64,000 nucleotides of DNA from Leucoraja ocellata (lineage: Eukaryota). Shown here piece after piece: positions 21,393-63,966 of this stretch (position 1 is the first letter of the stretch; each line of letters begins with the position of its first letter). The stretch lies in NCBI GenBank assembly GCA_036785375.1, contig JAWMAR010000070.1, positions 3,844,001 through 3,908,000 on the forward strand, written 5' to 3'. The translations under genes and the position numbers were made by a program. The notes beneath the pieces were generated by a model. The model did not search any database. It was not told the origin of the DNA and saw nothing but the letters and a program-made list of their open reading frames with translations.

Positions 21393-21419
21393 GTAAGTTT
21401 TACTTCATAAGTTGATGAT

Positions 21420-25130: not shown

Positions 25131-25136
25131 TTTATT
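25131..25136 (-). promoter_or_regulatory. Polyadenylation signal of receptor A (paralogous site 35229-35234 for B)
   Basis: AATAAA about 300 nt after the stop, conserved in both duplicated 3' ends. Confidence 0.55.
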
Positions 25137-25434
25137 ATGAAGCATTCATATCATCTGCATTATTATTCATTTAATTGAAAAAAAAAACTATTCCAGTAAA
25201 TTGAATGCACTGAACAGAGTTTAACAGGGTTAGTTAACTCGAGCAGTTGGAAACTATGCTACGGTTAGGTAATTGCACTAACTTGACGATAGAAACTTTG
25301 GGGGAGGTGAGGAAAAATAAGATCAGAGCGGGGACCGGGTTCTGGAAACAGACCTGGTCTTGACTTCTGGCAACCTTGCTTTGAAGTCACTTTCATGAAA
25401 TCAATGGTTTATTGACAAGAGACATATATTCTGA

Positions 25435-25569
25435 TCAATTGATACCAATTGACAAAGCTGGGTGATATATATTTGATTGCTGTGCAGAATTCCTTCGATG
25501 TTGGTGCAAGCTAGGAGTCTCCATTGTAATTGGTGGACCGTGTGTCGAGGTTCTGAATTCATCGCGTTT
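25435..25569 (-). CDS. Receptor A exon 6: cytoplasmic tail (no ITIM)
   Basis: Acceptor ctgatgacttcacattgtcttttgcag (conserved in copy B), phase 0 matching the TM donor; KRDEFRTSTHGPP...LSIGIN*. Confidence 0.6.
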   Translation of the reverse strand, partial: KRDEFRTSTHGPPITMETPSLHQHRRNSAQQSNIYHPALSIGIN

Positions 25570-26227
25570 CTGCAAAAGACAATGTGAAGTCATCAGACTA
25601 ATTGACGCTGGGAACCAAAGATCCACAGGGCCTTTGATGGGAGCCACGGTTTGTTTCACCTGACCGCTCGCAACACAATGCTGCCTGGAAGATCGATCCC
25701 AGACAACCCACCTCAAGCACAGAAATCCACCCTGAAGGCATACAACCTGACAAAACCGTGTGATATAATCTGTAGAGAGCTTTGGTTTGACTTCAGCATA
25801 TGAAAATGAGCACTGTTCTTGTTTGTGTCATTGGACAGGGTAATTGAAATCATCAATTAATTAAACCGTTTTCCGATACATTCGGCGGCGAGGAGCAATC
25901 TCTTTGGTCAGAGTGTGGCGATTCTGTGGAATTCATTGCCACAGAAGGCCGAGGAGGCCAAGTCAATTATCTCCAGAAATGCTGCTTGTCCCCCTGAGTC
26001 ACTCCAGCATTTTGTTTCTGTCCAAGTCAATGGATATTTTTAAGGCAGAGATTGAGATTCTTTTCATAAGTACGGGTGTCTGGGGTTATGAGGTAAGGGC
26101 AGGAGAACGGGATTGAGATGGAAAGGTAGATCAGCCGTGATTGAATGGCGCATTAGACTTGATGGGCTGAATGGCCTAATTCTGCTCTGATAATTTATGA
26201 ATCCGAATATCTGACAATAAAACCTAC

Positions 26228-26318
26228 CTCAGTGCCGCCTGTGAACAACGCGATTGAGATCCTCCAGATCACAAGCAGGAGAAAGAGCATCCAGCGCCCC
26301 ACTTTCCATGAGATGTAA
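26228..26318 (-). CDS. Receptor A exon 5: transmembrane segment with basic residues (activating type)
   Basis: cttgccctttgcccag|...GAG|gtaggt; YISWKVGRWMLFLLLVIWRISIALFTGGTE; phase 2 to 0. Confidence 0.8.
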
Positions 26319-26806
26319 CTGGGCAAAGGGCAAGAAAAACAGAATCACTGTGAGGAAACGAGACGGTTTATCTTTGAAACATTTACCTGCTATTTACGTC
26401 CTAACCTTAGTGGAGTGAAGCGGGGCGAAACAGCAGAGCCAATGGAGATCAGCTGTGAGTAAGAACTGAGTTGGACTGAGAGGGGGGGGGGGGGGGGGGG
26501 CGAAGACAATTTATGATCACCGATCTAATTACTGCGGGACTGGGAATGAAACACTACAGGGTTATATGGATTCAGAAAAACACAGAGAAACCATACATGA
26601 GGGCGTGGGCGTGAAACCAATGAATACAGTGTAATTCCTTGGGAGAAAGAAGGCGCAGCGGAAAGGAAGAGTATAATAAAATCCACATGGGTGGACATGA
26701 ACATTAACGATGACTAATGGTGGAGGGGAGGCAAGGCAGGAAATGCAAAGAGATCAGGCCAATTAATAAAATGATTTAAACATAATAACGCTTGATCTCA
26801 TATTAC

Positions 26807-26870
26807 TCGATATTACTTGGATTGACGCGGTAGATGTTTGGATGGGGGAATCGAGTTCGGGTTGATGATC
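26807..26870 (-). CDS. Receptor A exon 4: stalk (tentative; donor at 26816 or 26806)
   Basis: Homologous to 37438-37503. Only the distal GTAATA donor (64-nt exon) joins the phase-1 C2 exon to the phase-2 TM exon in frame. Confidence 0.4.
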
Positions 26871-26971
26871 CTATGGCGCCCACACACATGAGGGAACCTC
26901 CAGTAACAGAACTTCCAGCCGGTTGACCACCACAATGACCACCCTGAACTATCAAACCCTCCATCACTTAC

Positions 26972-27292
26972 CTTTGCCATTGACCTCAATGACCATGGTG
27001 CAGGTCCCGTCAGGGTTGGAGGTGACCACATTGACAACTTCACTCAATATATTTCCTTGTGTATTTGAGGCTGCGCAGTAATATTGATGTAGTTGCGGTT
27101 TCAAGGACAGGCAATGCAGATCCAATGTATTGGTATCTGACACCTTTGAATCCTCAGAAGAGGTCCTCTCAAACCATGTGTATACAATGGGAAGAGATCC
27201 TTCGTGGGACTCACAGGACACTGATGCTGAACCCGCAAAACAGGAGACGTTGCCCGATGACTGGAATCCAAGTACAGGAACAGACACGGGTT
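26972..27292 (-). CDS. Receptor A exon 3: C2/I-type Ig domain
   Basis: 321 nt, phase 1-1, AG/GTAAGT; EPVSVPVLGF...SCES..GSLPIVYTWF...YYCAASN. Confidence 0.88.
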
Positions 27293-29263
27293 CTGTTGGA
27301 AAGAATTACACATTGAGTAGACATCTGAAAAACAATCCTTCTCCAAATTTGAAAACTTCTATATCTCAACCTGGACCCACCAGACTGGAACCTTACCAGC
27401 TTATCGACTGAAGAAGGGTCTCGACCCGAAAGGCCACCTATTCCTTTTTCTCCAGAGATGGTGTCTACCCGCTGAGTCACTACAGTTTTTAGTATCTTTC
27501 ATCTTATCTACCTCCCCGTGTCTCAGTATTGCCAAGATGCCTGAATTGGGCATTAGATACCATGTTATGGGAGATGTTGTCAAGTGGGTGAGGAGGGTGC
27601 GGAGATGAGTTACGATGAGGTTGGCAGGACTCTAGGGTCTGAGCAATAGAGAGATTTTAAGGGGTAGGGGAAAAGATTAATCGGAATTTTTGTAACTGGT
27701 AACTCTTTCAGATAAAGGGCGGTGGGTGTATGGGACGAGCTGCCAGACGAGGTAGTCGAAGCAGGGACTATCGCAATGCTTAAGAAACAATTAGACAGGT
27801 ACGTGGGTAGCAACAAAATGCTGGATTAACTCAACGGGACAGGCAGCATCTCTGGATAGAAGTAACGGGTGACGTTCCGGGTCGTGGTCCTTCTTCAGAC
27901 TGTGTCAGGGGAGAGGGAGGCACAGAGATAAGGAAGAGGAATGTGTGAAAACGAGACATCAAAGCAGAAGGGCTCAAGGAAATTGTAGAATAGATTATTG
28001 TTAGTAAGGAGAAGGTGGTAAAGAAGTATGCAGAAAACATTTAATTGGGGACAGTCGGACTCTCGGAGATAGAGGGAGAGAGAGAGAGACCGCGGGTGGC
28101 GATGGGGTGACTGACCCGTGAAGTGGGGACGGAGAGATTTAATAAGTTCATAGTTTCAAGGTGCAGAATTAGGCCATTCAGCCCATCATGTCAACCCCGC
28201 CATTCACAGTCATGGCTGATCTATTGTTCCCTCTTAACCCCATTCTCCTGCCTTCTCCACATAACCGCGTACACACTGGCCTGTTAACCTCCACCTTATA
28301 ATATTAATTGGTTTGTGCTCCACAGCGGTCTGTGGGCAATGAATTCCTCAGATAGGTCACCTTCTGACTAAATAAATCCCTTCTGATCTTCTCTCTGAAG
28401 TACGTCCATTTATTCTCAGGCTATGGCCTCTGGCCCGAGTCTCTCGCACTAGTGGAAACATCATCTCCACGTCCACTCTATCCAGGCCTTTCACTATACG
28501 GTAAGTATCAACTCAAGCGAGTAACGGCCCAGCGCTGTCAAACGCTCATCATTTGTTAACCCAACTTATTCCTGGGATCATTCTTGTAAACCTCCTCTGG
28601 CCCCACTCCAGACCTAACACACCCTTCCTCAGATATGGTGCCTGGAACTGGTCATAACACTCCAAATAGAAACATAGAAAAATAGGCGCAGGAGTAGGCC
28701 ATTCGGCCCTTCAAGCCTGCACCGCCATTCAATATGGTCATGGCTGATCATCCAACTCAGTATCCCGTACCTGCCTTCTCTCCATACCCCCTGATCCCTT
28801 TAGCCACAAGGGCCACATCTAATCCCCTCTTAAATATAGCCAATGAACTGGACTCAACTACTTTCTGTGGCAGAGAGTTCCAGAGATTCACCACTCTCTG
28901 TGTGAAAATGTCGTCTGACCAGCGCCTTATAGAGCCTCAGCATTACATCCATGTTTTTACATTCTATAAATAAATGCTAGCATTGCATTCGCTTTCCTTA
29001 CTACCGATTGGACTTGCAAATTAACAGTTCAGACGCAGGGAAATGTGTTGAGCGGCCCACTTGAAGTGGGTGGCCGCTCAGTGGGACAGAGCACGCACTG
29101 GGTGAGAGCAACATGAGTGGGGTTTCCCGACCCCCGCCCGCTCCCCGCAGGTCTCTGCACTGCTGCGGAGCCTCGGGATATCGGTGCTGCCCTGACCTTT
29201 CCCGGAGAAAACATGGATCAGGCATTTCAGTGGAGACGTCAAATCAATCGCTGAGAAACGTAC

Positions 29264-29569
29264 CGTCAGATACTTTGAGATGTACGTGAAACATTGCAGT
29301 AATTCCACATCTGTACCGTCCTGTATCTCCAATCTGAAGATCCTCCACAGTCAAAGTAAATATTCCTCGTGCCGGTATATCTGTGATTGACATTCTTCCA
29401 CTCCGTCCGCGTTGCCCATTCGTTTCCACCACTTCTGCACATTGGCGACTCTGCACACGGCACCAGTATTTTGTGTGTGAGCGGTACTCTGGTGCATAGT
29501 GACAATCGATTGTGATCGCTCTTCCCACAACTCCTCTTACATACGCCTTTCCCCACACTGCAGCTGAAA
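29264..29569 (-). CDS. Receptor A exon 2: V-type Ig domain, CD300/pIgR/TREM-like
   Basis: 306 nt, phase 1-1; ITIDCHY...KYWCRVQSRQC...DTGRYRCG with the family-diagnostic extra C-C' disulfide pair. Confidence 0.92.
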
Positions 29570-30649
29570 CTGAAGGAGGGAACTTTCAGAACTGAGAGGA
29601 ACTGAACTGTTTCATGAAAGTTGATACATTTTGAAGATTACATGAAAGAAAACTTAAATGGTTCCATGATGTGTCATTTTGCTTCACGGCCAATGTCTCC
29701 GGCCTGAAGTGCAGGCAGTGCTGTTATTGTACCAGTTGTGTCAGTGTTCTGTCCCCGGTAGTGAGGGAGCGCGGCAGTGCGGTACTGAGGGAGCGCGGCA
29801 GTGTTGCAGGAGCTGCTTTTCAACAGCCCAAGCGGTGTCCGGCCTCTCATCCGACAGAAATACCCCACTTTGCTATATCATTGGCGGAGCCACCGGCTGC
29901 GCCGCCAACATTCATCTCTCAACCGACACTGGGCCGGACCCGTGTTTAGATATTCACCGCCGCCATTGCCTTCAGAACGGCGAAGAGGAAACACTTTTTC
30001 ACACAGAGAGTTGTGAATCTGTGGAATTATATGCCTCAGAAGGTAGTGGAAGCCAATTATTTTGATGCTTACAATGGAGAATTAGATAGAGATGTTAGAT
30101 TGCGGAGTCGGGGGATATGGGGAGGCAGGAACCGGTTACTGATTGTGGATGATCAGCCATGATCACAGTGATTGGCGGGGCTGGCTCGAAGTGCGGAATG
30201 GCCTACTCCTGCACCTATTGCCTATTGTCTGTTCCTGGTGATGTCTGAACCTCTGTCCTTTGGTACAATTGTCTTGGAGTATATGCTCCAAATTTAGTCG
30301 CTATGTTATGCATATAAAGAATTCTTAGGGTTCAATTTGGCAATGTTGCAACAGTGCTTAAATTACTAACTTGGAGTCTGGAAATTCAGATGCGATCTCA
30401 GTTCCTACCATGATACATAGCGAGTTCGGATCCATTGTATTAAATATTTCTAAGACTGGGAAACGTATAGCAGCAATGGTGACCATGAAGCCAGGAAATT
30501 ATCACCCAACTCCATCTACCATTCCTGTCCAGACTTGTTTACAAGCGACTGCAGACCCCCCCCCCCACAACGAGCTTGGCTCTGAAGCGTCTTTCTGCAA
30601 TGGCCCAGAAAGGAAAAAAAAAAGAGAGATCAGTACAATAAATACTGGC

Positions 30650-30840
30650 TGTTTAAGAAGGAACTGCAGATGCTGGAAAATCGAAGGTACACAAAAATGC
30701 TGGAGAAACTCAGCGGGTGCAGCAGCATCTATTTGAGCGATGGAAATAGGCAACGTTTCGGCCCGAAACGTTGCCTATTTCCTTCGCTCATAGATGCTGC
30801 TGCACCCGCTGAGTTTCTCCAGCATTTTTGTGTACCTTCG
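30650..30840. mobile_element. Palindromic Penelope-derived insertion with target-site duplication
   Basis: Near-perfect inverted repeat centred on ...tttcggcccgaaa...; 12-bp direct repeat ataaatactggc at 30638-30649 and 30841-30852. Confidence 0.85.
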
Positions 30841-31224
30841 ATAAATACTGGCCTTGTGAGCCACACGCGTCCGGTGAAAATCAGTAACAAAACAATTAAA
30901 TCTATTTGAATTCTAGAGCAGAATCGTTGATGTGCCATGTGGGTGAAGCGTACATCTCTATACGGTCAGAGGCAAAGGGCGTGTGGGAAGTGACTCTAAA
31001 TTTTAAGAGTAAAGGCAGTCACGCCAGTCAGCTGTCGAGCAGAACCGTGGCATGAACTGAGGATCACAACGTGTTTTCCGATTTTATAGAACTGAAGCCA
31101 AAATGAACTTGAGAGAAAATATATCAGGGGCATTAGTTCCACAGAAGCCAATGTGAGCGGGAGAAATTGTATCTGCGACATTAATTCCACAATTTCTGCC
31201 TTTCTGAAAATAAGGCTAGCAAAG

Positions 31225-31860: not shown

Positions 31861-32158
31861 GCTCTTTCACGAAATAAACTGGTTTTCATTGCCCGGCCGT
31901 TGTATGCCAAACTTCCTTTATATTACCAATCCACTATGGCGTATGAAAGATATGAAACAACAATGTATTCTGATTCAAAGGCATATTGGATAACATAAAA
32001 TTTTGATCAAATAAATGACACGCCGACACCACAATGCACTGGGTTCCATTGCCCCCATTACTTGCCTACACGCACGTAACCATCTCTGCCGTGGAAAGAG
32101 TACACGGAACCCCAACTAACATTGATTATTGGGATATTGAATTCTGGCTATCACTCAC

Positions 32159-32195
32159 CCGGCAGCGAGGAGATGAGAAGAATGGGAATCCACAT
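32159..32195 (-). CDS. Receptor A exon 1: signal peptide
   Basis: MWIPILLISSLP-G|gtgagt, 37 nt, phase 1. It joins the V exon to give MWIPILLISSLPVSAAVWG. An in-frame ATG also lies at 32207. Confidence 0.85.
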
Positions 32196-32294
32196 TGTTT
32201 TATCCATAGTGACAAGACCAGCACTTGTCTGTCTGTCGCTCAGCTCTGAGCTCTCAGATACAACCGCATCTCTCTAATATCAACGAGGAAGATA

Positions 32295-32380
32295 GGATCA
32301 GGAAGTCTGATCGTGAACCACAGCGAGCCAGCAGCAGCGCGACACGTTACAGTGTGAAAGGCTCAGGGTTATATTTAACA
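32295..32380 (-). promoter_or_regulatory. Putative core promoter of receptor A (paralog about 39490-39575)
   Basis: TATA-like TTAAATATAA at 32369-32378, conserved in both copies; ETS-like CAGGAAGT near 32300 in copy A only. Confidence 0.35.
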
Positions 32381-34289
32381 AATGGTTGGGTCAGATTGTC
32401 ACAGAGACATATAGCTCGGAGACAGGCACTTCTCCCCAACGTGTTAGACCAAGATGCTTATCTAGGTTAGTCAAAATTGCCCACGTTTGACCCATATCTC
32501 CCCAAACCCTTTCTATCTATGGGCCTGCCCAATTGTAATTCAGAGCTAATAAATTAGCAGAGTTGTGTTCATGAAAATATTATTTGCTGACTTTGTACAT
32601 CTGTTTGTGATGATTAATTTAATTAATGTTTGCATGATAATATAACATGTCATCTGCTGTGGGCTACCGTTCTTGGTGTTTTACTTTCAGGGGAACGGTG
32701 CAGTTTATTCGGGTTGTGCACATCAGTGGCAATGTTGTGGTATCGGTGTAACACAATGATGTGTCCGCCACTGATGTTAGTTGAGCGTTGGCGACCCTCA
32801 GTAAAGGGTCTTTTGGTTCGGAGCTATTTCCCGTTTCCTCCCCCAAAACGCTGCAGACAGGAATCGACGATGCAGCAAAACAATTTATTTTAATCCTCGT
32901 CCTGCTTTGACCCAAGATTTCTGCAAAACACTGCTCAGCAAACATCGAGCTGCTCGCAAGACACGGTTCAGAGATACGAATCTACACACCCTTGTATCAG
33001 CAGCGCGAGCAAAGTGTCAGCACTGCAGAACCATTCAGTGTAAATGAACAAATTAGTGTTTGAACATTTGTAATTAAAGTACATTCCAAGCCTGAACTGT
33101 CCTCTAAAAACAACGGTGCCTGTCCCGCTGAGTTGCTCCAGTATTTTGTGTCTATCTGTGGCATCTCAGACCGTTTACCTCTCACTATCAGTGAGGCACT
33201 TTGGGATGTCCTGCAGTGGGGAAAGGCTGTAATTCAAGTTAATTTCTCCCATTAGACCATTAACAAGCTCAATTTGAACGGGCCAGGCAGCATCAGTGTG
33301 ACCACAGAATCTGCAAGTATCTCTGGCTATTCAGCACCCCTCGGATATCCCTGACCTGGGGGTTTGTGAGTTCAAAGCAGCCTCTGGTCTCATTTCCTCG
33401 TCTCCCCGCTTACTGTGTGGAGAATATTTATCTGTGTCAGTTGGACATTTTACCCAAAGCAATCCTTGAGTCTATCCTAACTTTATGGTGGTTACTCCGT
33501 TATTGCAGGTCACCATTTCTTATTTCCAAACAACATCCTTCACAGTTCTTTCATGGGCGGGGTTACAGTCACAAGTCAGACTGAGGAAAGCAACACAATG
33601 TATTTGCAGTTTCACACCCCGCCCTTTGCAAGCTGCAACTCAACCATTTTGTTCTGCACAAGAATAGACTTTCAACTAGATTAGTTTAGTTCAGTTCAGT
33701 TTGAAGATACAGCGAGGAAACAGGCCCTTCGGCCCATCGAGTCCACACTGACCAGCAACCCCCGCACATTAACACTACCCCACACACACTGGGGACAATT
33801 TACATTTATAACAAGCCAATTAACCTGCATACCTGTACGTCTATGGAGTGTGGGAGGAAACGGAAGATATCGAAGAAAAACCCACGCGGTCACGGTAGAA
33901 CGTACAAACTCCGTACAGACAGCACCCGTAGTCGGGATCGAACCCGGGTCTCCGGTCCTGTGAGCGCTGTAAGGCAGCAACTCTACCGTTGCGCCACCCT
34001 GGCCATTATTTATAGTCCTTTAACTCCTTTGTACGGTGGACAAACTGAATAACTCGTTGCAGCATGAAACTATTTATCAATCTTACTGTACCCCAAAGAC
34101 GCGAAAGTGGGGTGATATAGAACCAGTGTGAAAGGGTTGATTGCTGGTTGACGTGGACTCGGTGGGCCAAATGGTCTGTATCCATGCTGTATCTCTCAAT
34201 CACTTAATCAAAAAATCAAACATGCTGGATTATCTCAACGGGACAGGCAACATCAAAGATCTTAGAGCAGAGCTTTGGGCAGCATCACT

Positions 34290-35935: not shown

Positions 35936-36018
35936 ATATCAGTTAACAAAGCAGGATGATGAATAAATATTTCATCGCGGTGCAGAATTCCCTCACTGTT
36001 GGTGCAAGCTAGGTGTCT

Positions 36019-39000
36019 TCATTCGTGGGTCGAGTGGCGAGGTTCAGACTCATCGCGTCTCTGCAAAAGACAATGTGAAGTCATCAGACTCATTGACAGT
36101 GGTAACAACGCTTTATTAACCCGACCACTCCCAACACATTGCTGTCCGGAAGATGGACTCTAAAGAACCCACACCGGGCACACAAATCCACCCTGCACAC
36201 GTACAACCTGACAAAACCTCGTGATATCATCCACATAGAGGTTTGGTTTAACTTCAGGATATGAAAACGCGCACGGTTTTTATTTCTATCAATGGACAGG
36301 ACATTTGAAAGCGTTAATGGAAACCGTTTGGAAACATTCGGTGAAGAGAAGTGATTGCTTTGGTCAGAGGGTAGCGAATCTATGGATGTCATTACCACAG
36401 GAGGCTGTGGAGGCCAAGCCAATTCACACCTGAGTTGATGCCTGTTCCGCTGAGCTACTTCGGCATTTTTGTATCTGTCTAAATCAATTGGTATTTTTAA
36501 GGCGGAGATTTTCATATTCTTGATAAATGAGGATGTCAAGAGTCATCGGGAGATGGCAGGAGAATGGGATCGAGTGGGAAGCCGTGATTGGGGGCCGATT
36601 AGATATGATGGGCTGAATGGCCTAATTCTGCTTCTATAATTCATGAGCACGATGACAATGACGCCTACCTTCGAGCCTCTAGTGAGCACCGCGGTTGAGA
36701 TACTCCAGATCACAAGCAGGAGAAAGACCATCCAGCGCCCCACTTTCCATGAGATGTAATTGGGCAAAGGGCAAGAGATACAGAATCACTGGGAGAAAAC
36801 GAGACGGTTTATCTTCGAAACATTTATCTGTTATTTGCTTCATAATCTTGGTGAAGTGGAGCGGGGCGAAGCAGCAGAGTCAATGGAGATCAGTTTGGAG
36901 AAAGAACGGGGTTTGGACTTGGGGGGGGGGGGTAGTTATGATCACCAATTACTGACGTCATTGCTGGAGCATGGCTACAAGGGAATGAGAGATTACGCGG
37001 TTAAATGGATTCGGAGAAGAGAGAGAAATAAGTTATGAGATGGAGCAGTGAATACAGTGAATACAGAGTAGATGCTGGTGAAACAGCGGGATAGGCAACA
37101 TTTCTGGAGGGAAGGAATGCGTGGTTTTCGGATACAGACCCTTCTTCAGACTGGGAGTCACGGGGGAGAGAAACTGGGGATGTGGAAAGAAACAAAGAAC
37201 AGTGTAATATCCTGGAAGAAAGAAATGCAGCCGCAAGGAAGATTATAATAAAACGCATATCAGAATCAGAATCATACTTTATTCGCCAAGTATGTTCTGC
37301 AACATACGATAGGAACAATAAACCAGATCAATTCTAATGGTGCAAGGGAGATGGGGCAACAAATATGGAAACAGATGAGGCCAATGAATAAAACAAATTA
37401 AAAATGATAATGCTTAATCTCACATCCTCGATATTACTTGGATTAACGCGGCAGGTCTGTGGATATAGGAATCGTGTTCGAAAATTCGGTGAAAGGTTCG
37501 CTCCTAACGGCGTGGCTTTAGTTAACGTTCTTATTATATCCTAAGCCCCTCTCCCACCCACCCGCTCTGCACAGATCCATTCGCTCTCCTGCACGCACGG
37601 GGCAATTTACAACTGGCACATCTATGGGAGCTGGGAGGAAACTGGAGCACTTATATGAAATCAACACGATTAAAGGCAAAACATGCAGACCACACACAGA
37701 CAGCACCTAATGGACCAGGGTCGTGGCGTTGTGAGGCTGTGATTCTTATCGGCTGTGCCACTGTGCATTCAGATCAATACTCTCACGGCATTCAATGCCA
37801 GTGAAAGGAAGGCACACGTTTCCCCCAATTAAAGAATTCCCAATCAAAACACCAGCAATTTGTTCATTGTAACTTTCATTGGAAACAGAGCGGTTTACCT
37901 TGCAGAGTAATTGGATGTTATCAAATTTTCACAAGAACATTCATGACCTGGTGGAACAAGGAAATAAAAGTCAGTTTCACTGCTTTTCACTCCTCCCTGT
38001 GAACGCGTGGGTTTTCTCCATTCTAAATTCCAGAGTATACAAGCGCAGCCGCTCCATTCAATCAACATATGACAGTCCCCCGCCTTCTCCGGAATTGTCC
38101 TTGTGAACCTACGCTGCACTCCCATCAATAGCAAGAAGGTCCTTCCTCAAATTTGGAGTTCAAAGCTGCACACAATAATCTAGGTGTGGTCTCACTAGTG
38201 CCATGTGCAACTTCAGAAGGACCTCTTTGCTCCTGTACTCAACTCCTCTTATTATTAAGGTCAACATGCCACTAGCTGTCTTCACTGCCTGCTGTACCTG
38301 CATGCTTACTTTCAGTGAGTGATGAACAAGGACACCCCAGATCTCTTTGTACTTCCCCTTTTCCCAACCTGACACCATTCAGATAATAATCTGCCTTCCT
38401 GCTTTTGCTACTAAAGTGGCCAACCTCACATTTATCCACATTAAACTTCATCCACCATGCATCTAGCCACTCACTCAACCAATCACCCACTCACCACTCG
38501 CTCACTCACCACCCACCTCCAGGTCCCTTACCGGAGAGCGTTACGAGCGTGAAAACGCACACCACCAGATCCGGGGACAATTTCTTCACAGCTGTTATCA
38601 GGCATCTGAATCATCCTACCACATCCAGAGATCTGTCCTGAACTCCCATCTACCACTTTGTTGACCTTCGGACTACCCTTGATCGGACTTTGCTGGCCTT
38701 ACCTTACACTAAACGCTATTTCCCATTAATGTACCTATGCACTGTAAGGGGATCGACTGTAATCATGTATCTGGCAGGTTAGCACGCAACAAAAAGCTTT
38801 TCTCTGTAACTCTGTACACGTGACAATAAACTGAATTTGAATTTCAGCACGATTGGGCCGCGGATCCGAGAGCGGATGGAGAGAGAGTTGGGAGTGGGTG
38901 GATAGAGCGAGGACAGTGGTTCAGTCTCAGACTCCGGGGAATTGTTGGGTTTACGACAGAGTTGAGTGGGACAAATGCAGGGAGTATTTGAACTGACACA

Positions 39001-39405
39001 ATGAGACCACAATCCTGACTTCCACCTCAGTTGTAAACACATGTTGTTAGCGTAGAGTTAACTTCCTGGTGATGTTAGAACCTCTGTTCTTCTGTCCAGG
39101 TGTCTTGGAGTATCTGCTCCAAATTAATTTGGTATGTTATGCCTATAAACCTCCATCATGATGCAATTAGACCAAGTGTTAACAGTGGTTAAACTCCGAA
39201 CATTGTCTAGATATTCAAATGTGATTTCAGATCCATCACCACAATGCACTGAGTTCCATCTCGCTCATTACATGTCTACACACACTTAACCATCTCTGCT
39301 GTAGAAAGGGTGCACGGGACCCCAACTAACATTGATCATTGGAATATCAGGATCTGGCTTTCACTCACCCGGCAGCGAGGCGATGAGAAGAATGGGAATC
39401 CACAT
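36019..39405 (-). pseudogene. Receptor B: pseudogenised activating-type paralog (leader 39369-39405, stalk-1 37899-37947, stalk-2 37438-37503, TM 36669-36759, tail 36019-36060)
   Basis: Leader MWIPILLIASLP, but no Ig exon before the stalk; TAA at 37443-37445 where A has CAA; TM acceptor is AA instead of AG; TM YISWKVGRWMVFLLLVIWSISTAVL; tail RRDESEPRHSTHE*. Confidence 0.75.
37990..38490 (-). mobile_element. CR1 LINE fragment lying where the Ig exons of copy B would be
   Basis: WWMKFNVDKCEV, LHMALVRPHLDYCVQL. Confidence 0.85.
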
Positions 39406-42947: not shown

Positions 42948-43265
42948 CTTCAGATACTTGGAGATGTTCTTGAAATGTTGGTTCGCCAGGTGTAGTAATT
43001 CCACATCTGTACCATCCTGTATCTCCAGAGTGAAGATCCTCCACAGTCACAGTAAATATTCCTCGTGCCGGGTTATCTGTGATTGACACTCTTCCGTTCT
43101 GTCCATCCTTCCCATTTGTTTCCACTACATGTGTACACTGGCGACTTGTCCCGTTGCACCAGTATTTTGTGTGTGAGCGGTACACTGCTGCATAGTGACA
43201 ATCGATTGTGATCGCTCTTCCCACAACCCCTCTTACATCGCTCTCAGCCCACAGTGCACCTGAAA
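42948..43265 (-). CDS. Orphan intact V-type Ig exon (CD300/pIgR-like), closest to the exon at 58267-58584
   Basis: 318 nt, phase 1-1, intact AG/GT; VSGALWAESDVRG...KYWCNGTSRQC...DTGWYRCG; no leader or C2 exon adjacent. Confidence 0.75.
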
Positions 43266-49045: not shown

Positions 49046-49312
49046 CTAAGAAACGACAGAGGCATAGGTTGACTCAGTGTTCTCTGGAGTCATAGTAGAG
49101 TGGGGTTTCCGAATGCCCTTTGGGCAGTTGCGGTGAAAATTGACATCTGCGTAGACGACAGCGTGTTCAGCCGCATGCTGCCTTGATCTCAACTTCCTTT
49201 GACAATTCACCACTGCATACGCGATTCCACCTTCATTGTTATCCAAATGGTCACCTGCCCTGTTGTTTTCCAGATTTGAATCAACGTGGTTCCCTTCCAT
49301 CACTGCCATTTC
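49046..49312 (-). CDS. Receptor C last exon: cytoplasmic tail with three ITIMs
   Basis: Phase-0 acceptor tatttcag; IAYAVV, VVYADV and STYASV then TAG. Confidence 0.88.
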   Translation of the reverse strand, partial: EMAVMEGNHVDSNLENNRAGDHLDNNEGGIAYAVVNCQRKLRSRQHAAEHAVVYADVNFHRNCPKGIRKPHSTMTPENTESTYASVVS

Positions 49313-49679: not shown

Positions 49680-49726
49680 CTGGGTTTCATCGTTGTCTTC
49701 ACCGTGTGATGTATTGTACTTGGATT
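49680..49726 (-). CDS. Receptor C cytoplasmic mini-exon
   Basis: 47 nt, phase 1 to 0, ttttccag/gtaaca; ESKYNTSHGEDNDETQ; bridges the TM and ITIM exons in frame. Confidence 0.75.
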
Positions 49727-51701: not shown

Positions 51702-51790
51702 CCTTGGTTTCACGCTTTCGGTACCAAAAGAAGGTAATGATGAGAATCAGGAGAAGCACAGTGACACCAGACCCAACTATGTAAATGATC
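51702..51790 (-). CDS. Receptor C transmembrane exon (uncharged)
   Basis: 89 nt, phase 2 to 1; IIYIVGSGVTVLLLILIITFFWYRKRETK; strong polypyrimidine acceptor and GTGAGT donor. Confidence 0.88.
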
Positions 51791-54225: not shown

Positions 54226-54274
54226 CTTGATGACGCATTGGATCCTTTCGAAGTTTCACAAGAATATTCAGGTC
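54226..54274 (-). CDS. Receptor C stalk exon
   Basis: 49 nt, phase 1 to 2; GPEYSCETSKGSNASSR; same size and phase as 37899-37947. Confidence 0.8.
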
Positions 54275-55638
54275 CTGTTAGAACAAGGAAATAAAAATCA
54301 GTTTCACTGATTTTCACTTGCAGTTGAACAAGAGAGCATGCTTGTCCGATGTAAGGCGTTTATAGATTTAATAGACAGGGCAATGTTTCGCCAGTGTAAT
54401 TTGCAGCAAATGGGAGATGCTTGCACAACTCAGGTACAACTCAGGTCGCCAACATTAGGGCGGCACAGCGGTAGAGTTGCTGCATTACAGCGCCACAGAC
54501 CCGGGTTCAATCCTGACTACGGGTACAATCTGCACTGACTTCGTATGTTCTCCCTGTGACCGCGTGGGTTTTATTCAAATGCTCCGGTTTTCTCCCACAT
54601 TCTAAAGTCGTGCAGGTTTTGAGGTTAACTGCCTTCTGTAAATTGTCCCTAGTGAGTGGGATAGAATTGGTGCACCTGTTAAAGGCAGTTGCTTCCACCT
54701 GGATTTCTAAACCAAACTAAAGGAGGTAATTTCATGCGAGGGATAGTGCCTGGATAGATGGGGATTTTACTCCATATAGGAAAAGAAGGGGGAACCTACT
54801 ACCGGTGTGTAAAGCTACGAGGAACATAGATAGGGTATTTTGTGGGAAATCAGCACAGCAGATGTACGAAGAAGTGAAGAACATAGGGTTGGGTTAAGGA
54901 GTAGAATATTTGGAGGGTATCTGAGCAAGAAGTATTTTTAAACTTAGATAGTGGAAGCACTTGGATTGTCAACTCTGAGAAGATTGTGGATGAGGGGCTG
55001 GTAAAATGGATTAGTATCGATGGTACTGAATGGTCAACATTAACACAGTGGACCAAAGCTGATAGGAGTTAATTCTATGGGGTAACTGCGGCCACATTTA
55101 CTGATAATTCCTGTTCCCTTCCCATATTTGAGTGTCGGTCATGTGGAGATGACGGAAAGTGAAAGTGCTTGGACTGATGTCACTACAAACCTAGTTTAAA
55201 GCTGTGTAAACATAAGAAGAAGTTCTAGCCCGGAAGCTGGCCTACACCAGCACTGGGGAATCTGTGGCTGGAGCCCAGCAACCAAGTATTGACAAATGGG
55301 CCATAATTCCATCATTTTAATCTTGATAACTTAATTAAATAATGTGCATGGATATCAGGGTGTCGGGGCTACGGGGAGAGGGCAGGAGAATGGGGTGAAG
55401 AGGGGAAGATACATCAGCCATGATTGAATGGTCTATTTCTGCTTCTATCACGTGATCCTATGAACCACCCCACCCCCACTTCCCCTTCTTCTCCCCATTC
55501 CCTTCACTACTTATAATTTGTTTGGTTGTTTTGTTGTTTGTCTTTTGCACAAAAGTCCGCGAGCATTGCCACTTTCATTTCACTGCACATCTCGTATGTG
55601 TATGTGACAAATAAACTTGACTTGACTTGACTACTTAC

Positions 55639-55959
55639 CAGTGCCGTTGATTTTCACCAGGAAACTGCAGGGCACGTCACTGCTGGAGATGGACACGTTG
55701 ACCATTTCACTGGATTTTGTTCCATTATTATTTGAGGTTGTGCAATAATATTGATGGTGTTGGTGTTTGAAGGATTGACAATGTAGATCCAGGGTATTGT
55801 TGTCTGAGATCTTTGAATCCCCAGATGGGGTATTTTCATACCAGCTGTAGTTAATGGGAAGGGATCCCCGGACCGACTCACAGGACACTGTCACTGAGCC
55901 CCCGAGACAGGAGACATTGGCTGGTGACAGAAACCCAAGCACAGGAACAGACACGGGTT
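55639..55959 (-). CDS. Receptor C membrane-proximal C2/I-type Ig exon
   Basis: 321 nt, phase 1-1; EPVSVPVLGFLSPANVSCLGG...SCES...YSWY...YYCTTSN. Confidence 0.9.
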
Positions 55960-58266: not shown

Positions 58267-58584
58267 CTTCAGATACTTGGAGATGTACTTTAAATGTTAG
58301 TTCGCCAGGTGTAGTAATTCCACATCTGTACCATCCTGTATCTCCAGAGTGAAGATCCTCCACAGTCACAGTAAATATTCCTCGTGCCGGGTTAACTGTG
58401 ATTGACACTCTTCCGCTCTGTCCATGTTTCCCATTTGTTTCCACTACATGTGGACACTGGCGACTTGTCTCACGACACCAGTATTTTGTGAGTGAGCGGT
58501 ACACTGCTGCATAGTGACAATCGATTGAGATCGCTCTTCCCACAATCCCTCGAACTTCGCTCTCTGCCCACAGTGCACCTGCAA
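58267..58584 (-). CDS. Receptor C V-type Ig exon
   Basis: 318 nt, phase 1-1; SIDCHY...KYWCRETSRQC...DTGWYRCG. Confidence 0.9.
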
Positions 58585-59701: not shown

Positions 59702-59779
59702 CTGCAAATAACAAGAAATCCATGAACATCACCTCAAAGCGAATAGCAGCAGGTTCAGGGACACGAGAAGAACACACAC

Positions 59780-60100
59780 CTGCATTGGTGATTTCTGTCA
59801 CATAACTGCACGTTCCTGCTCCTTTGAAGACTTTCACGTTGAGTATTTCACTGGATTTTGTCCCACGATTATTTGAGGCTGTGCAGTAATATTGACGGTG
59901 TTGACCTTCGAGGATTTCACAACTCAGATCCAGTTGATTGCCAGACACGGTAGTTGAAACCCAATGCTCGTTCTTTTCAAACCATGTGTAATGGATGGGA
60001 AGGGATCCACGGACAGACTCACACGACACTGACACTGAGCCTCCGAGATGTGAGGCATTTGCTGGTGACAGATATCTGAGCACTGGAGCAGACATGGGTT
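59780..60100 (-). CDS. Receptor C distal C2/I-type Ig exon
   Basis: 321 nt, phase 1-1; EPMSAPVLRYL...SCESVRGSLPIHYTWF...YYCTASN. Confidence 0.88.
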
Positions 60101-61597: not shown

Positions 61598-61918
61598 CGT
61601 CAGATACTTGGAGATGTACGTTAAATATTGGACGGTCGCCAGGTGTAGTAATTCCACAGCTGTACCATCCTGTATCTTCAGAGTGAAGATCCTCCACAGT
61701 CACAGCAAATATTCTTAGTGCGGGTATATCTGTGATTGACACTCTTCCACTCCGTCCGTTTTGCCCATTTGTTTCCACTGAAACTCTACATGGGCGATTC
61801 CTCCCACGGCACCAGTATTTTGTGCGTGAGCGGTACGCTGCTGCATAGTGACAATCGATTGTGATCGCTCTTCCCACAACCCCTCTTACATCCCTCTCTG
61901 CCCACACTGCATCTGAAA
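61598..61918 (-). CDS. Receptor C V-type Ig exon
   Basis: 321 nt, phase 1-1; KYWCRGRNRPC...DTGWYSCG. Confidence 0.9.
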
Positions 61919-61970
61919 CTGAGGGGAGAAACTTTCAGATCAACCACAGATCAAACAACACTTGTTCCTC

Positions 61971-62150
61971 TGTGGAGCGAAGGAAATAGGCAACGTTTCG
62001 GGCCGAAACCCTTCTTCAGTCTGAAGAAGGGTTTCGGCCCGAAACGTTGCCTATTTCCTTCGCTCCATAGATGCTGCTGCACCCGCTGAGTTTCTCCAGC
62101 TTTTCTGTGTAACCTTCGATTCTCCAGCATCTGCAGTTCCCTCTTAAACA
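61971..62150. mobile_element. Palindromic Penelope-derived insertion with hammerhead cores on both strands
   Basis: Inverted arms around cttcttcag-t-ctgaagaag; direct repeat cttgttcctc at 61961-61970 and 62151-62160. Confidence 0.85.
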
Positions 62151-62269
62151 CTTGTTCCTCACCGGGATTATTAGTTTTGAGTCTGAATGCAAATTTCTGA
62201 CGGGTGACATTTCATACAGTTCAGAGGAAGAGAAATGCGCTGAGTATTCCACTTGAAGTGAAAAGTGAA

Positions 62270-62685
62270 GTTAAATCCCACTTTTCAAGAAAGGAGCGAG
62301 AGAAAACGGGAAATTACAGAGCAGTTAGCCTGACTTCGGTGCGGGAAAGATGCCGGAGTCAATTATTAAAGAGGTAATAATGGGGCATTTGCATAGCAGT
62401 AAAATAATTAGTCCAAGTCAGCATGGATTTATGAAAGGAAAATCATGCCTGACTAATCTTCTGGAATTTTTTGAGGAGGTGGCAAGTAAAATGGAGGAAG
62501 GTGCGCCAGTGAATGTAGTGTATCTAGACTTCAAGAAATCCTTTGATAAGGTTCCGCACGGGAGACTGGTGACTAAATTGAGAGCGCATGGAAGGGTGTT
62601 GACGTGGATAGGAAATTGGTTGGCAGACAGGAAGCAAAGAGTAGGAGTGAACGGGTCCTTTTCAGAATGGCGGGAAGTGGCGAGT
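62270..62685 (+). mobile_element. CR1 LINE RT fragment
   Basis: SQHGFMKGKSCLTNLLEFFE...VYLDFKKSFDKVPHGRL. Confidence 0.9.
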
Positions 62686-62721
62686 CAGTGGAGACGACAA
62701 GTCAATCGCTGCGAAACGTAC

Positions 62722-63042
62722 CGTCAGATACAAGGAGTTCTACGGTAAACATTGGGAGGCCGTTAGATGTTGCAATTCCACATCTGTACCACCCTGTATC
62801 GCCAGAGAGAAGATCCTCCACAGTCACAGTAAATATTCCTCGTGCCCGGTTATCTGTGATTGACACTCTTCCACTCCTTCCGTGTTGCCCAATTGTTTCC
62901 ACCATATCTGTACATTGGCGATTCTGCACACGGCACCAGTATTTTGTGTGTGAGCGGTACTCTGCTGCATAGTGACAATCGATTGTAAACACACTTCCCA
63001 CAACTGCTCTTACATACGGCTCTCCCCACACTGCACCTGAAA
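62722..63042 (-). CDS. Receptor C V-type Ig exon
   Basis: 321 nt, phase 1-1; KYWCRVQNRQC...DTGWYRCG. Confidence 0.9.
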
Positions 63043-63645
63043 CTGAAGGGGAGAAACTTTCAGATGGAGAGCAAATGAACAGTTTAGTGGAAATAGATAC
63101 ATTTTCAAGATTCCATGAAAGAAAACTTAAATAGTTCCATGATGTGTCATATTGCTTCACGGCCAATGTCTCCGGTCTGAAGTGCAGACAGTGCTGTTAT
63201 TGTACCAGTTGTGTCAGTGTTCTATCCCCGCGTCAGTGCAATTAGGGTTCACTTCCCACTCCAGATCCCTGAGCAGAAACTGGGCTGGGATCGCAGTGCG
63301 GTACTGAGGGAGCGCGGCAGTTTTGCAGGAGCTGCCTTTCAACAATCCCAGGCGGTGCCCGGCCTCTCACCCCACGAAAGACCCTACTTTGCTATTTCAT
63401 TGGCGGTGACAATTTCTTCACAGCAGTTATCAGGCATCTGAATCATCCTACCACGCCCAGAGATCTGTCCTGAACTCCCATCTACCTCTTTGACGACCCT
63501 CGGACCACCCTTGATCGTACTTTGCTGCCTTTACCTTACACTAAACGTTATTTAATATTCATGTATCTATGCACTGTAGGAGAATCGATTGTAATCCTGT
63601 ATTGTCTTTCTGCTGGAGACGTCAATCAATCGCTGCGAAACGTAC

Positions 63646-63966
63646 CGTCAGATACTTCGAGATGAACGTTAAATATTGGATGGTCGGCAGATGTTGTAAT
63701 TCCACATCTGTACCATCCTGTATCTCCATCCTGAAGATCGTCCACAGTCACAGTAAATATTCCTCGTGCCGGGTTATCTGTGATTGACACTCTTCCATTC
63801 CGTCCGTGTTGCTCATTTGTTTCCACCAAAACTGTACATTGGAGACTCCTCCCACGGCACCAGTATTTTGTGTGTGAGCGGTACTCTGCTGCATAGTAAC
63901 AATCGATTGTGGTCGCTCTTCCCACAACTCCTCTTACATCCCACTTTGCCCACAGTGCACCTGAAA
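63646..63966 (-). CDS. Receptor C V-type Ig exon (most 5' in window)
   Basis: 321 nt, phase 1-1; KYWCRGRSLQC...DTGWYRCG. Confidence 0.9.

What the first reader, a model, noticed from the sequence alone, without database searches (positions are those of the whole stretch)
25131..63966. Paired activating/inhibitory modular Ig-receptor cluster (CD300/pIgR-type V plus C2) in a cartilaginous fish
Seen: the same V and C2 ectodomain modules are wired to two opposite signalling ends. Gene A has a TM with Lys/Arg (WKVGRW) and no ITIM. Gene C has a neutral TM and three ITIMs (IAYAVV, VVYADV, STYASV). All splice phases close, giving A = 317 aa (using the tentative stalk donor) and about 812 in-window residues for C. 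Established: basic TM residues recruit ITAM adaptors (FcRgamma/DAP12) and ITIMs recruit SHP-1/2, as in the CD300, LILR and KIR paired receptors. Skate MDIRs are a known family with CD300/TREM/pIgR-like domains. Inference: this is a paired-receptor locus under birth-and-death evolution, and this particular architecture may be uncharacterised.
Basis: partly seen in the sequence, partly recalled or inferred. Interest (0 to 1): 0.85.

Follow-up and report, generated by a model that had tools for sequence, protein, structure and literature searches.

The report
Skate MDIR immune-receptor gene cluster
This stretch is part of the already described skate MDIR immune-receptor gene family: one intact inhibitory gene sits beside broken or converted copies of its activating-type partner, so it is ordinary apart from one copy that may now make a secreted protein.

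Summary
The exons are real. On the minus strand there are 6 pIgR/CD300-type V exons, 3 FCRL/CD22-type C2 exons, two Arg-bearing TM exons (WKVGRW) and one tail exon with three ITIMs.

The family is not new. The exons are 74-90% identical to the clearnose-skate cDNA proteins MDIR3 (V-V-C2-V-C2, neutral TM, same ITIM tail) and MDIR5 (V-C2-V-C2, same WKVGRW TM). They are up to 99% identical to RefSeq "pIgR-like" models of Leucoraja and Amblyraja.

- **Gene C** closes in phase over 10 AG/GT exons, giving 791 in-window residues. It is an MDIR3-type inhibitory gene.
- **Gene A** is not an intact activating gene. It lacks the 49-nt stalk exon that shifts the phase. Canonical splicing therefore reads the TM exon out of frame and stops after 16 residues, giving a 241-aa secreted V-C2 protein. 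Three RefSeq models in two other skates end the same way. Only a weak donor 4 nt downstream restores the TM frame.
- **A third unit** (leader-stalk-TM-tail) has no Ig exons and a TM acceptor mutated from AG to AA.
- **One V exon** is orphaned.

RNA reads gave only 1-3x stranded depth on gene A in one run, with no junctions.

Verdict: new members of a known kind, showing birth-and-death turnover. Interest is low.

The parts
63646..63966 (-). Gene C, V exon 6 (first Ig exon in the window; the leader exon lies beyond the window end)
   Evidence: V-set Pfam hit. AG/GT, phase 1-1, 321 nt. 88% identical to the first V of A. radiata P0009.
62722..63042 (-). Gene C, V exon 5
   Evidence: V-set. AG/GT, phase 1-1, 321 nt. 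Clade with winV1 and the P0009 and P0158 V domains, support 97/86.
61598..61918 (-). Gene C, V exon 4
   Evidence: V-set. AG/GT, phase 1-1, 321 nt.
59780..60100 (-). Gene C, C2 exon c
   Evidence: Ig_C17orf99, Ig_2 and Ig_3 hits. Best PDB match FCRL5, then CD22 d6-d7. 91% to A. radiata P0156, 80% to MDIR3, 81% to MDIR5.
58267..58584 (-). Gene C, V exon 3 (membrane-proximal V type)
   Evidence: V-set. 86% to MDIR3, 85% to MDIR5, 90% to P0156. Eight-row clade with MDIR3_V3 and MDIR5_V2, support 100/99.
55639..55959 (-). Gene C, C2 exon b
   Evidence: Ig-type Pfam hits below cut-off. 87% to MDIR3, 85% to MDIR5, 93% to P0156. AG/GT.
54226..54274 (-). Gene C, 49-nt Cys-containing stalk exon that converts phase 1 to phase 2
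   Evidence: tblastn with P0007 and P0027. Sequence. AG/GT and phases.
51702..51790 (-). Gene C, uncharged transmembrane exon followed by a basic stop-transfer stretch
   Evidence: Hydropathy scan. Sequence. 97% over 30 aa to P0156 and 79% over 33 aa to MDIR3.
49680..49726 (-). Gene C, first cytoplasmic exon
   Evidence: tblastn. AG/GT, phase 1 to 0.
49046..49312 (-). Gene C, last coding exon with three ITIM-like tyrosines and the stop codon
   Evidence: Motifs. 67 of 91 aligned columns identical to the MDIR3 C-terminus, E 9e-44. 92% to P0156.
42948..43265 (-). Orphan V exon (V2): intact ORF and splice sites, but no leader upstream and no C2 downstream
   Evidence: V-set E 5e-14. It and its flanks are an 88% duplicate of V3 with flanks. 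No leader-like exon between it and gene C's stop at my thresholds.
39369..39405 (-). Unit B', leader exon (copy of gene A's leader; the first of its two ATGs is lost)
   Evidence: Leader scan. Sequence. Duplicate of 32027-32535.
37899..37947 (-). Unit B', MDIR5-type stalk exon
   Evidence: tblastn. 81% DNA duplicate of gene C's stalk region. AG/GT.
36669..36759 (-). Unit B', WKVGRW TM exon with its acceptor mutated from AG to AA
   Evidence: 27 of 30 residues identical to the MDIR5 TM. Acceptor AA versus AG in gene A.
36019..36060 (-). Unit B', short MDIR5-type cytoplasmic tail exon with stop
   Evidence: Sequence. 79% over 14 aa to the MDIR5 tail.
32159..32207 (-). Gene A, leader exon
   Evidence: Leader scan. 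16 of 16 residues identical to the MDIR3 and L. erinacea P0167 leaders.
29264..29569 (-). Gene A, V exon 1
   Evidence: V-set. 98% over 99 columns to L. erinacea P0158 V1. Low stranded RNA depth in X10, X13 and X6.
26972..27292 (-). Gene A, C2 exon a. The strong donor follows 26972; a weak second donor follows 26968.
   Evidence: 105 of 106 residues identical to P0158. Donor list. RNA depth 0.8-1.75 in X10 only.
26228..26318 (-). Gene A, WKVGRW TM exon. It is entered in the wrong phase after canonical splicing, reads 16 residues and stops.
   Evidence: The alternative frame is 16 of 16 identical to the C-termini of P0009 and P0158. In the TM frame only 23 of 30 residues match MDIR5, with an extra Arg in the core.
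25435..25569 (-). Gene A, tail exon, frameshifted by a 1-nt indel relative to unit B' and MDIR5
   Evidence: Alignment A2. Sequence. Stranded depth 1.6-3.5 in X10 over 25131-25727.

Best explanation
The region is a piece of the skate MDIR (modular domain immune-type receptor) multigene cluster, transcribed on the minus strand. It comes from a skate very close to Leucoraja erinacea.

**Gene C** is an apparently intact MDIR3-type inhibitory receptor.
- It has six Ig domains (V-V-V-C2-V-C2), a short Cys-containing stalk, an uncharged transmembrane helix and a tail with three ITIM-like tyrosines.
- Inferred mechanism: ligand binding brings the tail near Src-family kinases, and the phosphorylated ITIMs recruit SHP-1/SHP-2-type phosphatases that damp activating signals.

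**Gene A** keeps a leader, one V and one C2 exon in front of an MDIR5-type Arg-bearing TM exon, but it has lost the 49-nt stalk exon that shifts the reading phase.
- With its strong splice sites it therefore encodes a 241-residue secreted V-C2 protein with a 16-residue out-of-frame end.
- Its TM and tail exons show decay in the old frame.

**Unit B'** is the gutted remnant of an MDIR5-type gene. It has a leader, stalk, TM and tail, but no Ig exons, and its TM acceptor is dead.

**V2** is an orphan V exon copied from gene C.

The window therefore shows birth-and-death turnover of a known paired family. It does not hold an intact activating/inhibitory pair.
For: **Family**
- Named MDIR3, MDIR5 and MDIR2 are among 119 hits (E<=1e-10, 3020 candidates) to the closest homologue of gene A.
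- Per-exon identities are 74-90% to MDIR3 and MDIR5, 88-97% to A. radiata P0156 and 99% to L. erinacea P0158.
- All 6 window V domains fall inside the skate MDIR clade.

**Domain types**
- V is closest to pIgR D1 and CD300 among solved structures, with 4 of 4 cysteines aligned.
- C2 is closest to FCRL5 and CD22 d6-d7.

**Gene C**
- 10 of 10 exons have AG/GT, the phases close, and no stop occurs before the tail's stop.
- The exon order matches MDIR3 and P0156 from the stalk onwards.

**Gene A**
- No stalk exon is present.
- The canonical product ends exactly like 3 of 246 stored proteins: P0009, P0158 and P0008.
- The stop lies 41 nt before the last junction. Under the usual 50-55-nt rule, which I recall, the mRNA should escape nonsense-mediated decay.
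- The tail carries a 1-nt indel and the TM core an S-to-R change.
- Stranded reads at 1-3.5x cover V1, C2a and the 3' end in X10.

**Unit B'**
- No V or C2 similarity lies between its leader and stalk.
- Its acceptor reads AA.

**Family-level pairing**
- 29 of 246 stored relatives carry W-x-VGRW plus a hydrophobic run, 5 carry the strict three-tyrosine pattern, and 0 carry both.
Against: - No junction-level RNA evidence exists for any gene here. The single read-laying run gave only 0-3.5x on gene A's exons. None of the 15 listed joints is a gene junction; 396 more were not shown.
- Gene C's leader exon is outside the window, so 'intact' is not shown at its 5' end. Whether all three N-terminal V exons are included together is unknown.
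- The secreted reading of gene A rests on splice-site strength and on automatic RefSeq models, whose RNA support I could not see.
- A weak +4 donor and 30 mechanical AG..GT segments in the intron could in principle restore a membrane form.
- The primary MDIR paper was not held, so what it says about architecture and signalling is recalled, not read.
- Whether the Arg sits inside the membrane and pairs with an adaptor is untested. One paper reports no FcR gamma chain in the shark genomes it screened (PMC4016189, passages).
Confidence: 0.8

Rival explanations
1. One reading: gene A is a working activating receptor. Its V-C2 ectodomain is joined in frame to the WKVGRW helix through a second donor or a small cryptic stalk exon, and it pairs with an ITAM adaptor opposite inhibitory gene C.
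For: - A GT 4 nt downstream of the strong donor gives phase 2 without passing a stop, and an open 301-aa frame through the TM and tail exons.
- 30 mechanical AG..GT segments in the intron also close the phase.
- The TM exon keeps the WKVGRW motif and an AG acceptor.
- RNA depth reaches the terminal exon.
Against: - The +4 donor matches the donor consensus poorly and sits beside a consensus GTAAGT donor.
- No cryptic segment resembles the family's stalk exon.
- Three RefSeq models in two other skates use the out-of-frame junction.
- In the TM frame the exon has an extra Arg in the hydrophobic core and has lost the basic anchor, with 23 of 30 residues matching MDIR5 against 27 of 30 for B'.
- The tail exon is frameshifted relative to MDIR5.
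Confidence: 0.12
2. Gene A is simply a dying pseudogene. Its transcript is noise and the 241-aa product has no function.
For: - The stalk exon is lost and the TM and tail exons are decaying.
- Expression is very low: at most 3.5x in 1 of 4 runs, traces in 2 and none in 1.
- A neighbouring copy is clearly dead.
Against: - The leader, V and C2 exons are open with intact AG/GT sites.
- They are 98-99% identical to an L. erinacea model and 80-93% to an A. radiata model that end the same way. The stalk-less form has therefore been kept in at least two genera.
- The stop lies 41 nt from the last junction, so decay of the mRNA is not expected.
- The tissues of the runs are unknown.
Confidence: 0.3
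3. These are true orthologues of the polymeric Ig receptor, as the RefSeq names of the relatives suggest. They would carry polymeric IgM across epithelia.
For: - The V exon's best solved-structure match is pIgR: whole-chain E 4e-48 over 5 stretches, best single domain 3.9e-12.
- Many relatives are named 'polymeric immunoglobulin receptor-like'.
Against: - C2 domains of FCRL/CD22 type are interleaved with the V domains.
- The tail carries ITIMs rather than a long sorting tail.
- The genes are many and turn over fast.
- CD300 chains score about as well per domain, 1e-18 for one domain.
- The RefSeq names are automatic.
Confidence: 0.03
4. The missing exons (the stalk in A, the Ig exons in B') are assembly errors, and both genes are intact activating receptors in the animal.
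For: Tandem near-identical units are hard to assemble, and the window holds many repeats.
Against: - The only N run is at 16431-16630, outside the cluster.
- The stalk-less junction is independently modelled in two other species.
- The point changes cannot come from collapse: AG to AA, the 1-nt indel and the S-to-R change.
Confidence: 0.05

Closest known systems
MDIR3 (modular domain immune-type receptor 3, clearnose skate Rostroraja/Raja eglanteria; P0157)
   Same: - Shares with gene C the leader type, pIgR/CD300-type V and FCRL-type C2 domains, a Cys stalk, a neutral TM and a two-exon tail with the same three tyrosine motifs.
- Per-exon identity is 74-87% from C2c to the tail.
   Different: - Gene C has three N-terminal V exons where MDIR3 has two. 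V6 and V5 resemble the V-V pair of another gene type, P0009.
- It comes from a different skate species.
MDIR5 (same species; P0168)
   Same: - Same stalk, WKVGRW TM and short acidic tail as unit B' (27 of 30 TM residues) and, more loosely, gene A (23 of 30).
- Shares its membrane-proximal V-C2 module with MDIR3 and gene C.
   Different: - MDIR5 is a complete V-C2-V-C2 receptor.
- In the window one copy lacks the stalk exon and the other lacks all Ig exons and its acceptor.
- I recall, without having read it here, that the original paper did not count MDIR5 as carrying a classical activating motif.
RefSeq models P0158 and P0008 (Leucoraja erinacea) and P0009 (Amblyraja radiata), named 'pIgR-like' or uncharacterised
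   Same: - They end in the same 16-residue out-of-frame reading of the TM exon directly after the C2 domain.
- C2a is 105 of 106 identical to P0158.
   Different: - They carry more Ig domains: V-C2-V-C2 or V-V-C2, against V-C2 in gene A.
- They are automatic predictions.
CD300/CMRF35 paired receptors of mammals
   Same: - V domain with two disulfides, E about 1e-18 to CD300 chains.
- Family logic of ITIM-tailed members and charged-TM members that use adaptors (established knowledge).
   Different: - CD300 proteins have a single V domain and a mucin-like stalk and no C2 domains.
- The charged residue and tails are unrelated in sequence.
Polymeric Ig receptor and FCRL5/CD22
   Same: The V exon's best solved match is pIgR D1. 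The C2 exon's best solved matches are FCRL5 and CD22 d6-d7.
   Different: pIgR has only V-type domains and a sorting tail. FCRLs have only C2-type domains. Here both types alternate in one chain.
Carp SITR (soluble immune-type receptor; PMC3031540, passages seen)
   Same: A secreted two-Ig-domain relative of CD300/MDIR-type V domains, without TM or signalling motifs, like gene A's canonical product.
   Different: - Different domain order and lineage.
- SITR genes encode soluble proteins outright. They do not become soluble through loss of a phase-shifting exon.

Membership tests
MDIR (skate modular domain immune-type receptors) | Ig ectodomains clearly homologous to the named MDIR cDNA proteins | tested here: met
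   - MDIR3, MDIR5 and MDIR2 are among the hits.
- 60-87% per-exon identity.
- 6 of 6 window V domains lie inside the skate MDIR clade, support 96/88.
MDIR (skate modular domain immune-type receptors) | Modular mixing of pIgR/CD300-like and FcR-like Ig domains in variable number (one to six; that number is recalled from the abstract, not read here) | tested here: met
   - V-V-V-C2-V-C2 in gene C and V-C2 in gene A.
- Domain types.
- MDIR3 and MDIR5 domain orders read from their sequences.
MDIR (skate modular domain immune-type receptors) | ITIM-bearing cytoplasmic tail of the MDIR3 type | tested here: met
   67 of 91 aligned columns identical to the MDIR3 C-terminus, with all three tyrosine motifs aligned.
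MDIR (skate modular domain immune-type receptors) | Members with a basic residue at or in the TM (MDIR5-type WKVGRW helix) joined in frame to Ig domains | tested here: not met
   - The exon type is present twice.
- Gene A enters it out of frame.
- Unit B' has no Ig exons and an AA acceptor.
- This feature fails for these two copies, not for the family.
CD300/CMRF35 | Single V-type Ig domain with two disulfides on a mucin-like stalk | tested here: not met
   The V type and 4 of 4 cysteines match. The proteins, however, have two to six Ig domains including C2.
Polymeric Ig receptor | Ectodomain made only of tandem pIgR-type V domains, with a long sorting tail and a single-copy gene | tested here: not met
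   - C2 domains are interleaved.
- The tail carries ITIMs.
- There are several tandem copies.
FCRL / classical FcR | Ectodomain made only of C2-type domains | tested here: not met
   The C2 exons match FCRL5 (E 5e-41 over 6 stretches) and FCRL4, but V domains are present in every unit.
Paired activating/inhibitory receptor system (functional class) | Activating member associates with an ITAM adaptor through the TM charge; inhibitory member recruits SHP-1/2 | not testable with these tools
   This needs co-immunoprecipitation and phosphatase recruitment assays. Only the motifs are shown.

The most novel reading that the evidence does not exclude
Loss of a single 49-nt phase-shifting stalk exon turned an Arg-TM (MDIR5-type) receptor into a secreted V-C2 decoy.
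- The decoy has been kept in at least two skate genera, Leucoraja and Amblyraja.
- Its stop codon sits 41 nt before the last exon junction, so the mRNA should escape nonsense-mediated decay.
- A tandem donor 4 nt downstream could still yield a small share of the membrane form.

One gene would then supply a soluble competitor, and perhaps a membrane receptor, for the ligand of its inhibitory neighbour.
Probability: 0.3. Interest if true: 0.4.

Novelty: new member of a known kind. Interest (0 to 1): 0.22.

Why it matters
There is little here to surprise a comparative immunologist. MDIRs were cloned from clearnose skate in 2006, and close relatives of these genes are already modelled in RefSeq as 'pIgR-like'.

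What the window adds is an exon-level genomic view of the family:
- A common exon plan: phase-1 Ig exons, a 49-nt stalk exon that shifts phase, and then one of two alternative TM/tail cassettes.
- Direct signs of birth-and-death turnover: an orphan exon, a gutted copy and a hybrid 5' end.
- A possible route from membrane receptor to soluble protein by loss of one small exon.

It also shows plainly that pIgR/CD300-type V domains and FCRL-type C2 domains coexist in a cartilaginous fish. This bears on a published statement that PIGR, FcRL and the FcR gamma chain were not found in the shark genomes screened (PMC4016189, passages).

Tried and rejected
**Ideas tested and dropped**
- A '+10' donor after gene A's C2 exon. 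The donors I find lie at +4 (phase 2, open) and +14 (phase 0, past an in-frame TGA). There is none at +10.
- Alternative acceptors upstream of gene A's TM exon. 7 of 7 run into a stop, and only 1 of the 7 even enters the TM frame.
- Cryptic stalk exons. 30 mechanical AG..GT segments close the phase, but none resembles the family's stalk.
- A leader exon for the orphan V2. None was found between 43266 and 49045 with an ATG, a phase-1 GT donor and 8-residue hydropathy of at least 2.4, nor with a leader regex. Weaker candidates were not examined.
- The MDIR5-type tail as an exonised copy of the repeat just after the TM exons. This rested on a peptide resemblance seen. There is no DNA similarity beyond 7-8-nt words, so I dropped it.
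- Rfam at gathering thresholds over the whole window: 0 matches.

**Evidence I could not get**
- RNA junctions. Read laying on 25131-31100 with X6, X9, X10 and X13 was dominated by repeats and gave no gene junction.
- The primary MDIR paper (Cannon et al. 2006) was not held under its PMC id or PubMed id, and a related review was not held either. The only held text mentioning MDIRs as immune receptors that my searches found was PMC3031540.
- A search for FcR gamma or DAP12 in cartilaginous fish gave nothing relevant: 7 papers listed, none on the subject.
- I asked for no supplementary files. Supplements of the MDIR paper or of skate genome papers may list these genes.

Full report
**What is there**

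All features lie on the minus strand. The only N run in the window is at 16431-16630, outside the region.

A tblastn of six window peptides against the window found six V exons, three C2 exons, two copies of the WKVGRW transmembrane exon and one copy of the tyrosine-rich tail exon.

Pfam V-set matched 6 of 6 V ORFs (E 3e-10 to 5e-14). Ig-type families matched 3 of 3 C2 ORFs. Ig_C17orf99 was just above its cut-off for two of them, and the third stayed below every cut-off.

Against solved structures the V exon is closest to the polymeric Ig receptor.
- The whole-chain E is 4e-48 over five stretches, and the best single domain gives 3.9e-12.
- All four cysteines align.
- CD300 chains come next at about 1e-18. 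NKp44, TREM2 and FCMR follow further down.

The C2 exon is closest to FCRL5 (5e-41 over six stretches), then CD22 d6-d7 and FCRL4.

**Gene models**

I read the splice sites from the sequence and checked them by script.

*Gene C* has ten in-window exons.

| Exon | Coordinates |
|---|---|
| V6 | 63966-63646 |
| V5 | 63042-62722 |
| V4 | 61918-61598 |
| C2c | 60100-59780 |
| V3 | 58584-58267 |
| C2b | 55959-55639 |
| Stalk (49 nt) | 54274-54226 |
| Neutral TM | 51790-51702 |
| Cytoplasmic exon | 49726-49680 |
| Tail | 49312-49046 |

- All ten exons have AG/GT.
- The phases run 1-1 through the Ig exons, 1 to 2 in the stalk, 2 to 1 in the TM, 1 to 0 in the cytoplasmic exon, then 0.
- The frame is open for 791 residues up to the tail's stop.
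- The tail holds IAYAVV, VVYADV and STYASV.
- The leader exon must lie beyond the window end.

*Gene A* has five exons: leader 32207-32159, V1 29569-29264, C2a 27292-26972, TM exon 26318-26228 and tail exon 25569-25435.
- C2a ends in phase 1 and the TM exon needs phase 2.
- The family's stalk exon was found by homology in gene C and in unit B' but not in gene A.
- With the consensus donor the TM exon is read out of frame and the protein stops after 16 more residues, at 241 aa.
- The stop lies 41 nt before the last junction.
- A weak GT 4 nt downstream gives the TM frame and 301 aa.
- No donor at +10 exists.
- 7 of 7 alternative acceptors hit a stop.
- 30 mechanical AG..GT segments could close the phase, giving 315-318 aa for the three I counted. 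None resembles the stalk exon.

*Unit B'* is a diverged duplicate of gene A's leader region and 3' half.
- Its parts are leader 39405-39369, stalk 37947-37899, TM exon 36759-36669 and tail from 36060.
- No V or C2 similarity lies between its leader and stalk.
- Its TM acceptor reads AA where gene A has AG.

*V2* (43265-42948) is an 88% copy of V3 with its flanks. I found no leader for it at my thresholds.

**What family it is**

I searched exon by exon and sent no joined model to any tool.
- One V ORF found 4 proteins among 10 candidates, all batoid 'CMRF35-like' models.
- A full HMMER scan with V2 found 2640 representatives at E<=0.001. The best were skate and ray multi-Ig models, named 'polymeric immunoglobulin receptor-like' or uncharacterised. 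Names were obtained for 10 of 10 looked up.
- I then used the closest homologue of gene A (P0009, Amblyraja radiata) as the query. This gave 119 proteins at E<=1e-10 among 3020 candidates. Among them were three that UniRef names Modular domain immune-type receptor 3, 5 and 2 of Rostroraja eglanteria, a rajid skate.

Their sequences show the following.
- MDIR3 is leader-V-V-C2-V-C2-stalk-neutral TM with the same tail as gene C. 67 of 91 aligned columns are identical, E 9e-44.
- MDIR5 is leader-V-C2-V-C2-stalk-WKVGRW TM with a short acidic tail. It matches unit B' in 27 of 30 TM residues and gene A in 23 of 30.

- Gene C from C2c to the tail is 88-97% identical to A. radiata P0156 and 67-87% to MDIR3.
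- C2a of gene A is 105 of 106 identical to L. erinacea P0158.

A maximum-likelihood tree had 41 V-domain rows: 6 from the window and 35 from 17 proteins. Domains matched over fewer than 70 profile positions were dropped before the tree, and I did not count how many.
- All six window V domains fall inside the skate MDIR clade (96/88).
- V2 and V3 fall in a 100/99 clade with MDIR3_V3 and MDIR5_V2.
- V1 sits next to L. erinacea at 98% identity.

The animal is therefore a skate very close to Leucoraja erinacea.

**Is gene A activating?**

Three stored proteins of 246 end directly after the C2 domain with the same out-of-frame reading of the TM exon: P0158 and P0008 of L. erinacea and P0009 of A. 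radiata. The window's alternative frame is 16 of 16 identical to two of them.

In the TM frame gene A's exon has gained an Arg in the hydrophobic core and lost the basic anchor after the helix. Its tail exon carries a 1-nt indel relative to unit B' and MDIR5.

This points to a gene whose TM and tail are no longer read in the old frame. The product is most likely a secreted V-C2 protein or, less likely, nothing useful.

The RNA test was weak.
- 4 of 4 runs were laid on 25131-31100, but repeats took nearly all reads.
- Only X10 covered V1 (3.3x), C2a (0.8-1.75x) and 25131-25926 (1.6-3.9x). Almost all of it was in one read direction, as expected for a stranded minus-strand transcript.
- X13 and X6 gave 1-1.7x on V1, and X9 gave about 0.1x in one bin that touches V1.
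- None of the 15 listed joints is a gene junction; 396 more were not shown.

**Pairing at family level**

Among the 246 stored relatives, a biased set of hits, 29 carry W-x-VGRW followed by a hydrophobic run.
- The x residue is Lys in 20, Thr in 4, Met in 2, and Glu, Asn and Ser in 1 each. Because the search pattern itself contained the Arg, these 29 hits cannot show that it is conserved; they do show that the Lys is not.
- 5 carry the strict three-tyrosine pattern, none carries both, and the short acidic tail recurs.
- A search with the MDIR5 C-terminal region found 4 proteins among 21 candidates: MDIR5 and three Rhinoraja longicauda models.

The membrane-proximal V-C2 module is shared by both types. 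The family does look like a paired system.

An Arg a few residues into the helix recalls FcR gamma-coupled receptors. That is my recollection, not a test made here.

One paper reports that no PIGR, FcRL or FcR gamma chain homologue was found in the shark genomes it screened (PMC4016189, passages). The domain matches here show that related Ig domains do exist in a skate. The adaptor remains open.

**What is known**

[quoted passage not shown] It cites Cannon et al. 2006.

That paper was not held. My memory of its abstract is recall only: one to six Ig domains, MDIR1 with a charged TM, MDIR2 and MDIR3 with ITIMs, and MDIR4 and MDIR5 without classical motifs.

My three searches for MDIR terms found no other held paper on these receptors.

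**Earlier scan notes**

These are unchecked notes. They mention the missing stalk exon of receptor A, tandem V exons, and further activating-type and inhibitory genes beyond the window end.
- I confirmed the missing stalk exon but not the +10 donor.
- The conserved start of each V exon is also found at internal domain junctions of the MDIR3 protein. Ordinary tandem inclusion explains it without combinatorial exon choice.

**Verdict**

The locus belongs to a known family with the known architectures. Inside this window only the inhibitory gene looks intact. I rate it a new member of a known kind, with low interest and a modest side-lead: conversion to a soluble form by loss of one exon.

Noticed in passing
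window 10688-11044 (-): An ORF whose end reads like the N-terminal exon of a G-protein alpha-i subunit (myristoylation start and P-loop lead-in). A GNAI-type gene therefore starts about 14 kb from gene A's 3' end.
   Followed up: no
window 28514-28911 and 30504-30901: Repeats with very high RNA depth in all four runs (up to about 3500x). They have many copies in the window and a near-perfect palindrome at 30680-30842. Rfam at gathering thresholds found no RNA family anywhere in the window.
   Followed up: partly
window 26027-26201 and 36484-36646: A short interspersed repeat sits directly after both WKVGRW TM exons, with further copies at 44904-45071, 21419-21547, 28163-28274 and 55358-55431. 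It confounds RNA depth over the TM exon. Its translation loosely resembles the MDIR5-type tail, but there is no DNA similarity.
   Followed up: yes
window 20913-21146 (+): Two weak plus-strand matches (E 0.08-1.7) to the first residues of the C2 exon. They may be decayed C2 relics or chance.
   Followed up: no
window 63966-62722 versus P0009: Gene C's first two V exons resemble the V-V pair of a different gene type: 88% and 76% to P0009, with tree support 93/87 and 97/86. The rest of gene C resembles P0156. This suggests a hybrid 5' end made by unequal recombination.
   Followed up: partly
stored proteins P0005 and P0027 (Rhinoraja longicauda RefSeq models): Two automatic models fuse neighbouring genes. 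One runs a complete receptor's TM exon into the next gene's V exon. The other fuses a TRIM69-like protein to an MDIR5-type receptor. Database names and lengths in this family are therefore unreliable.
   Followed up: no
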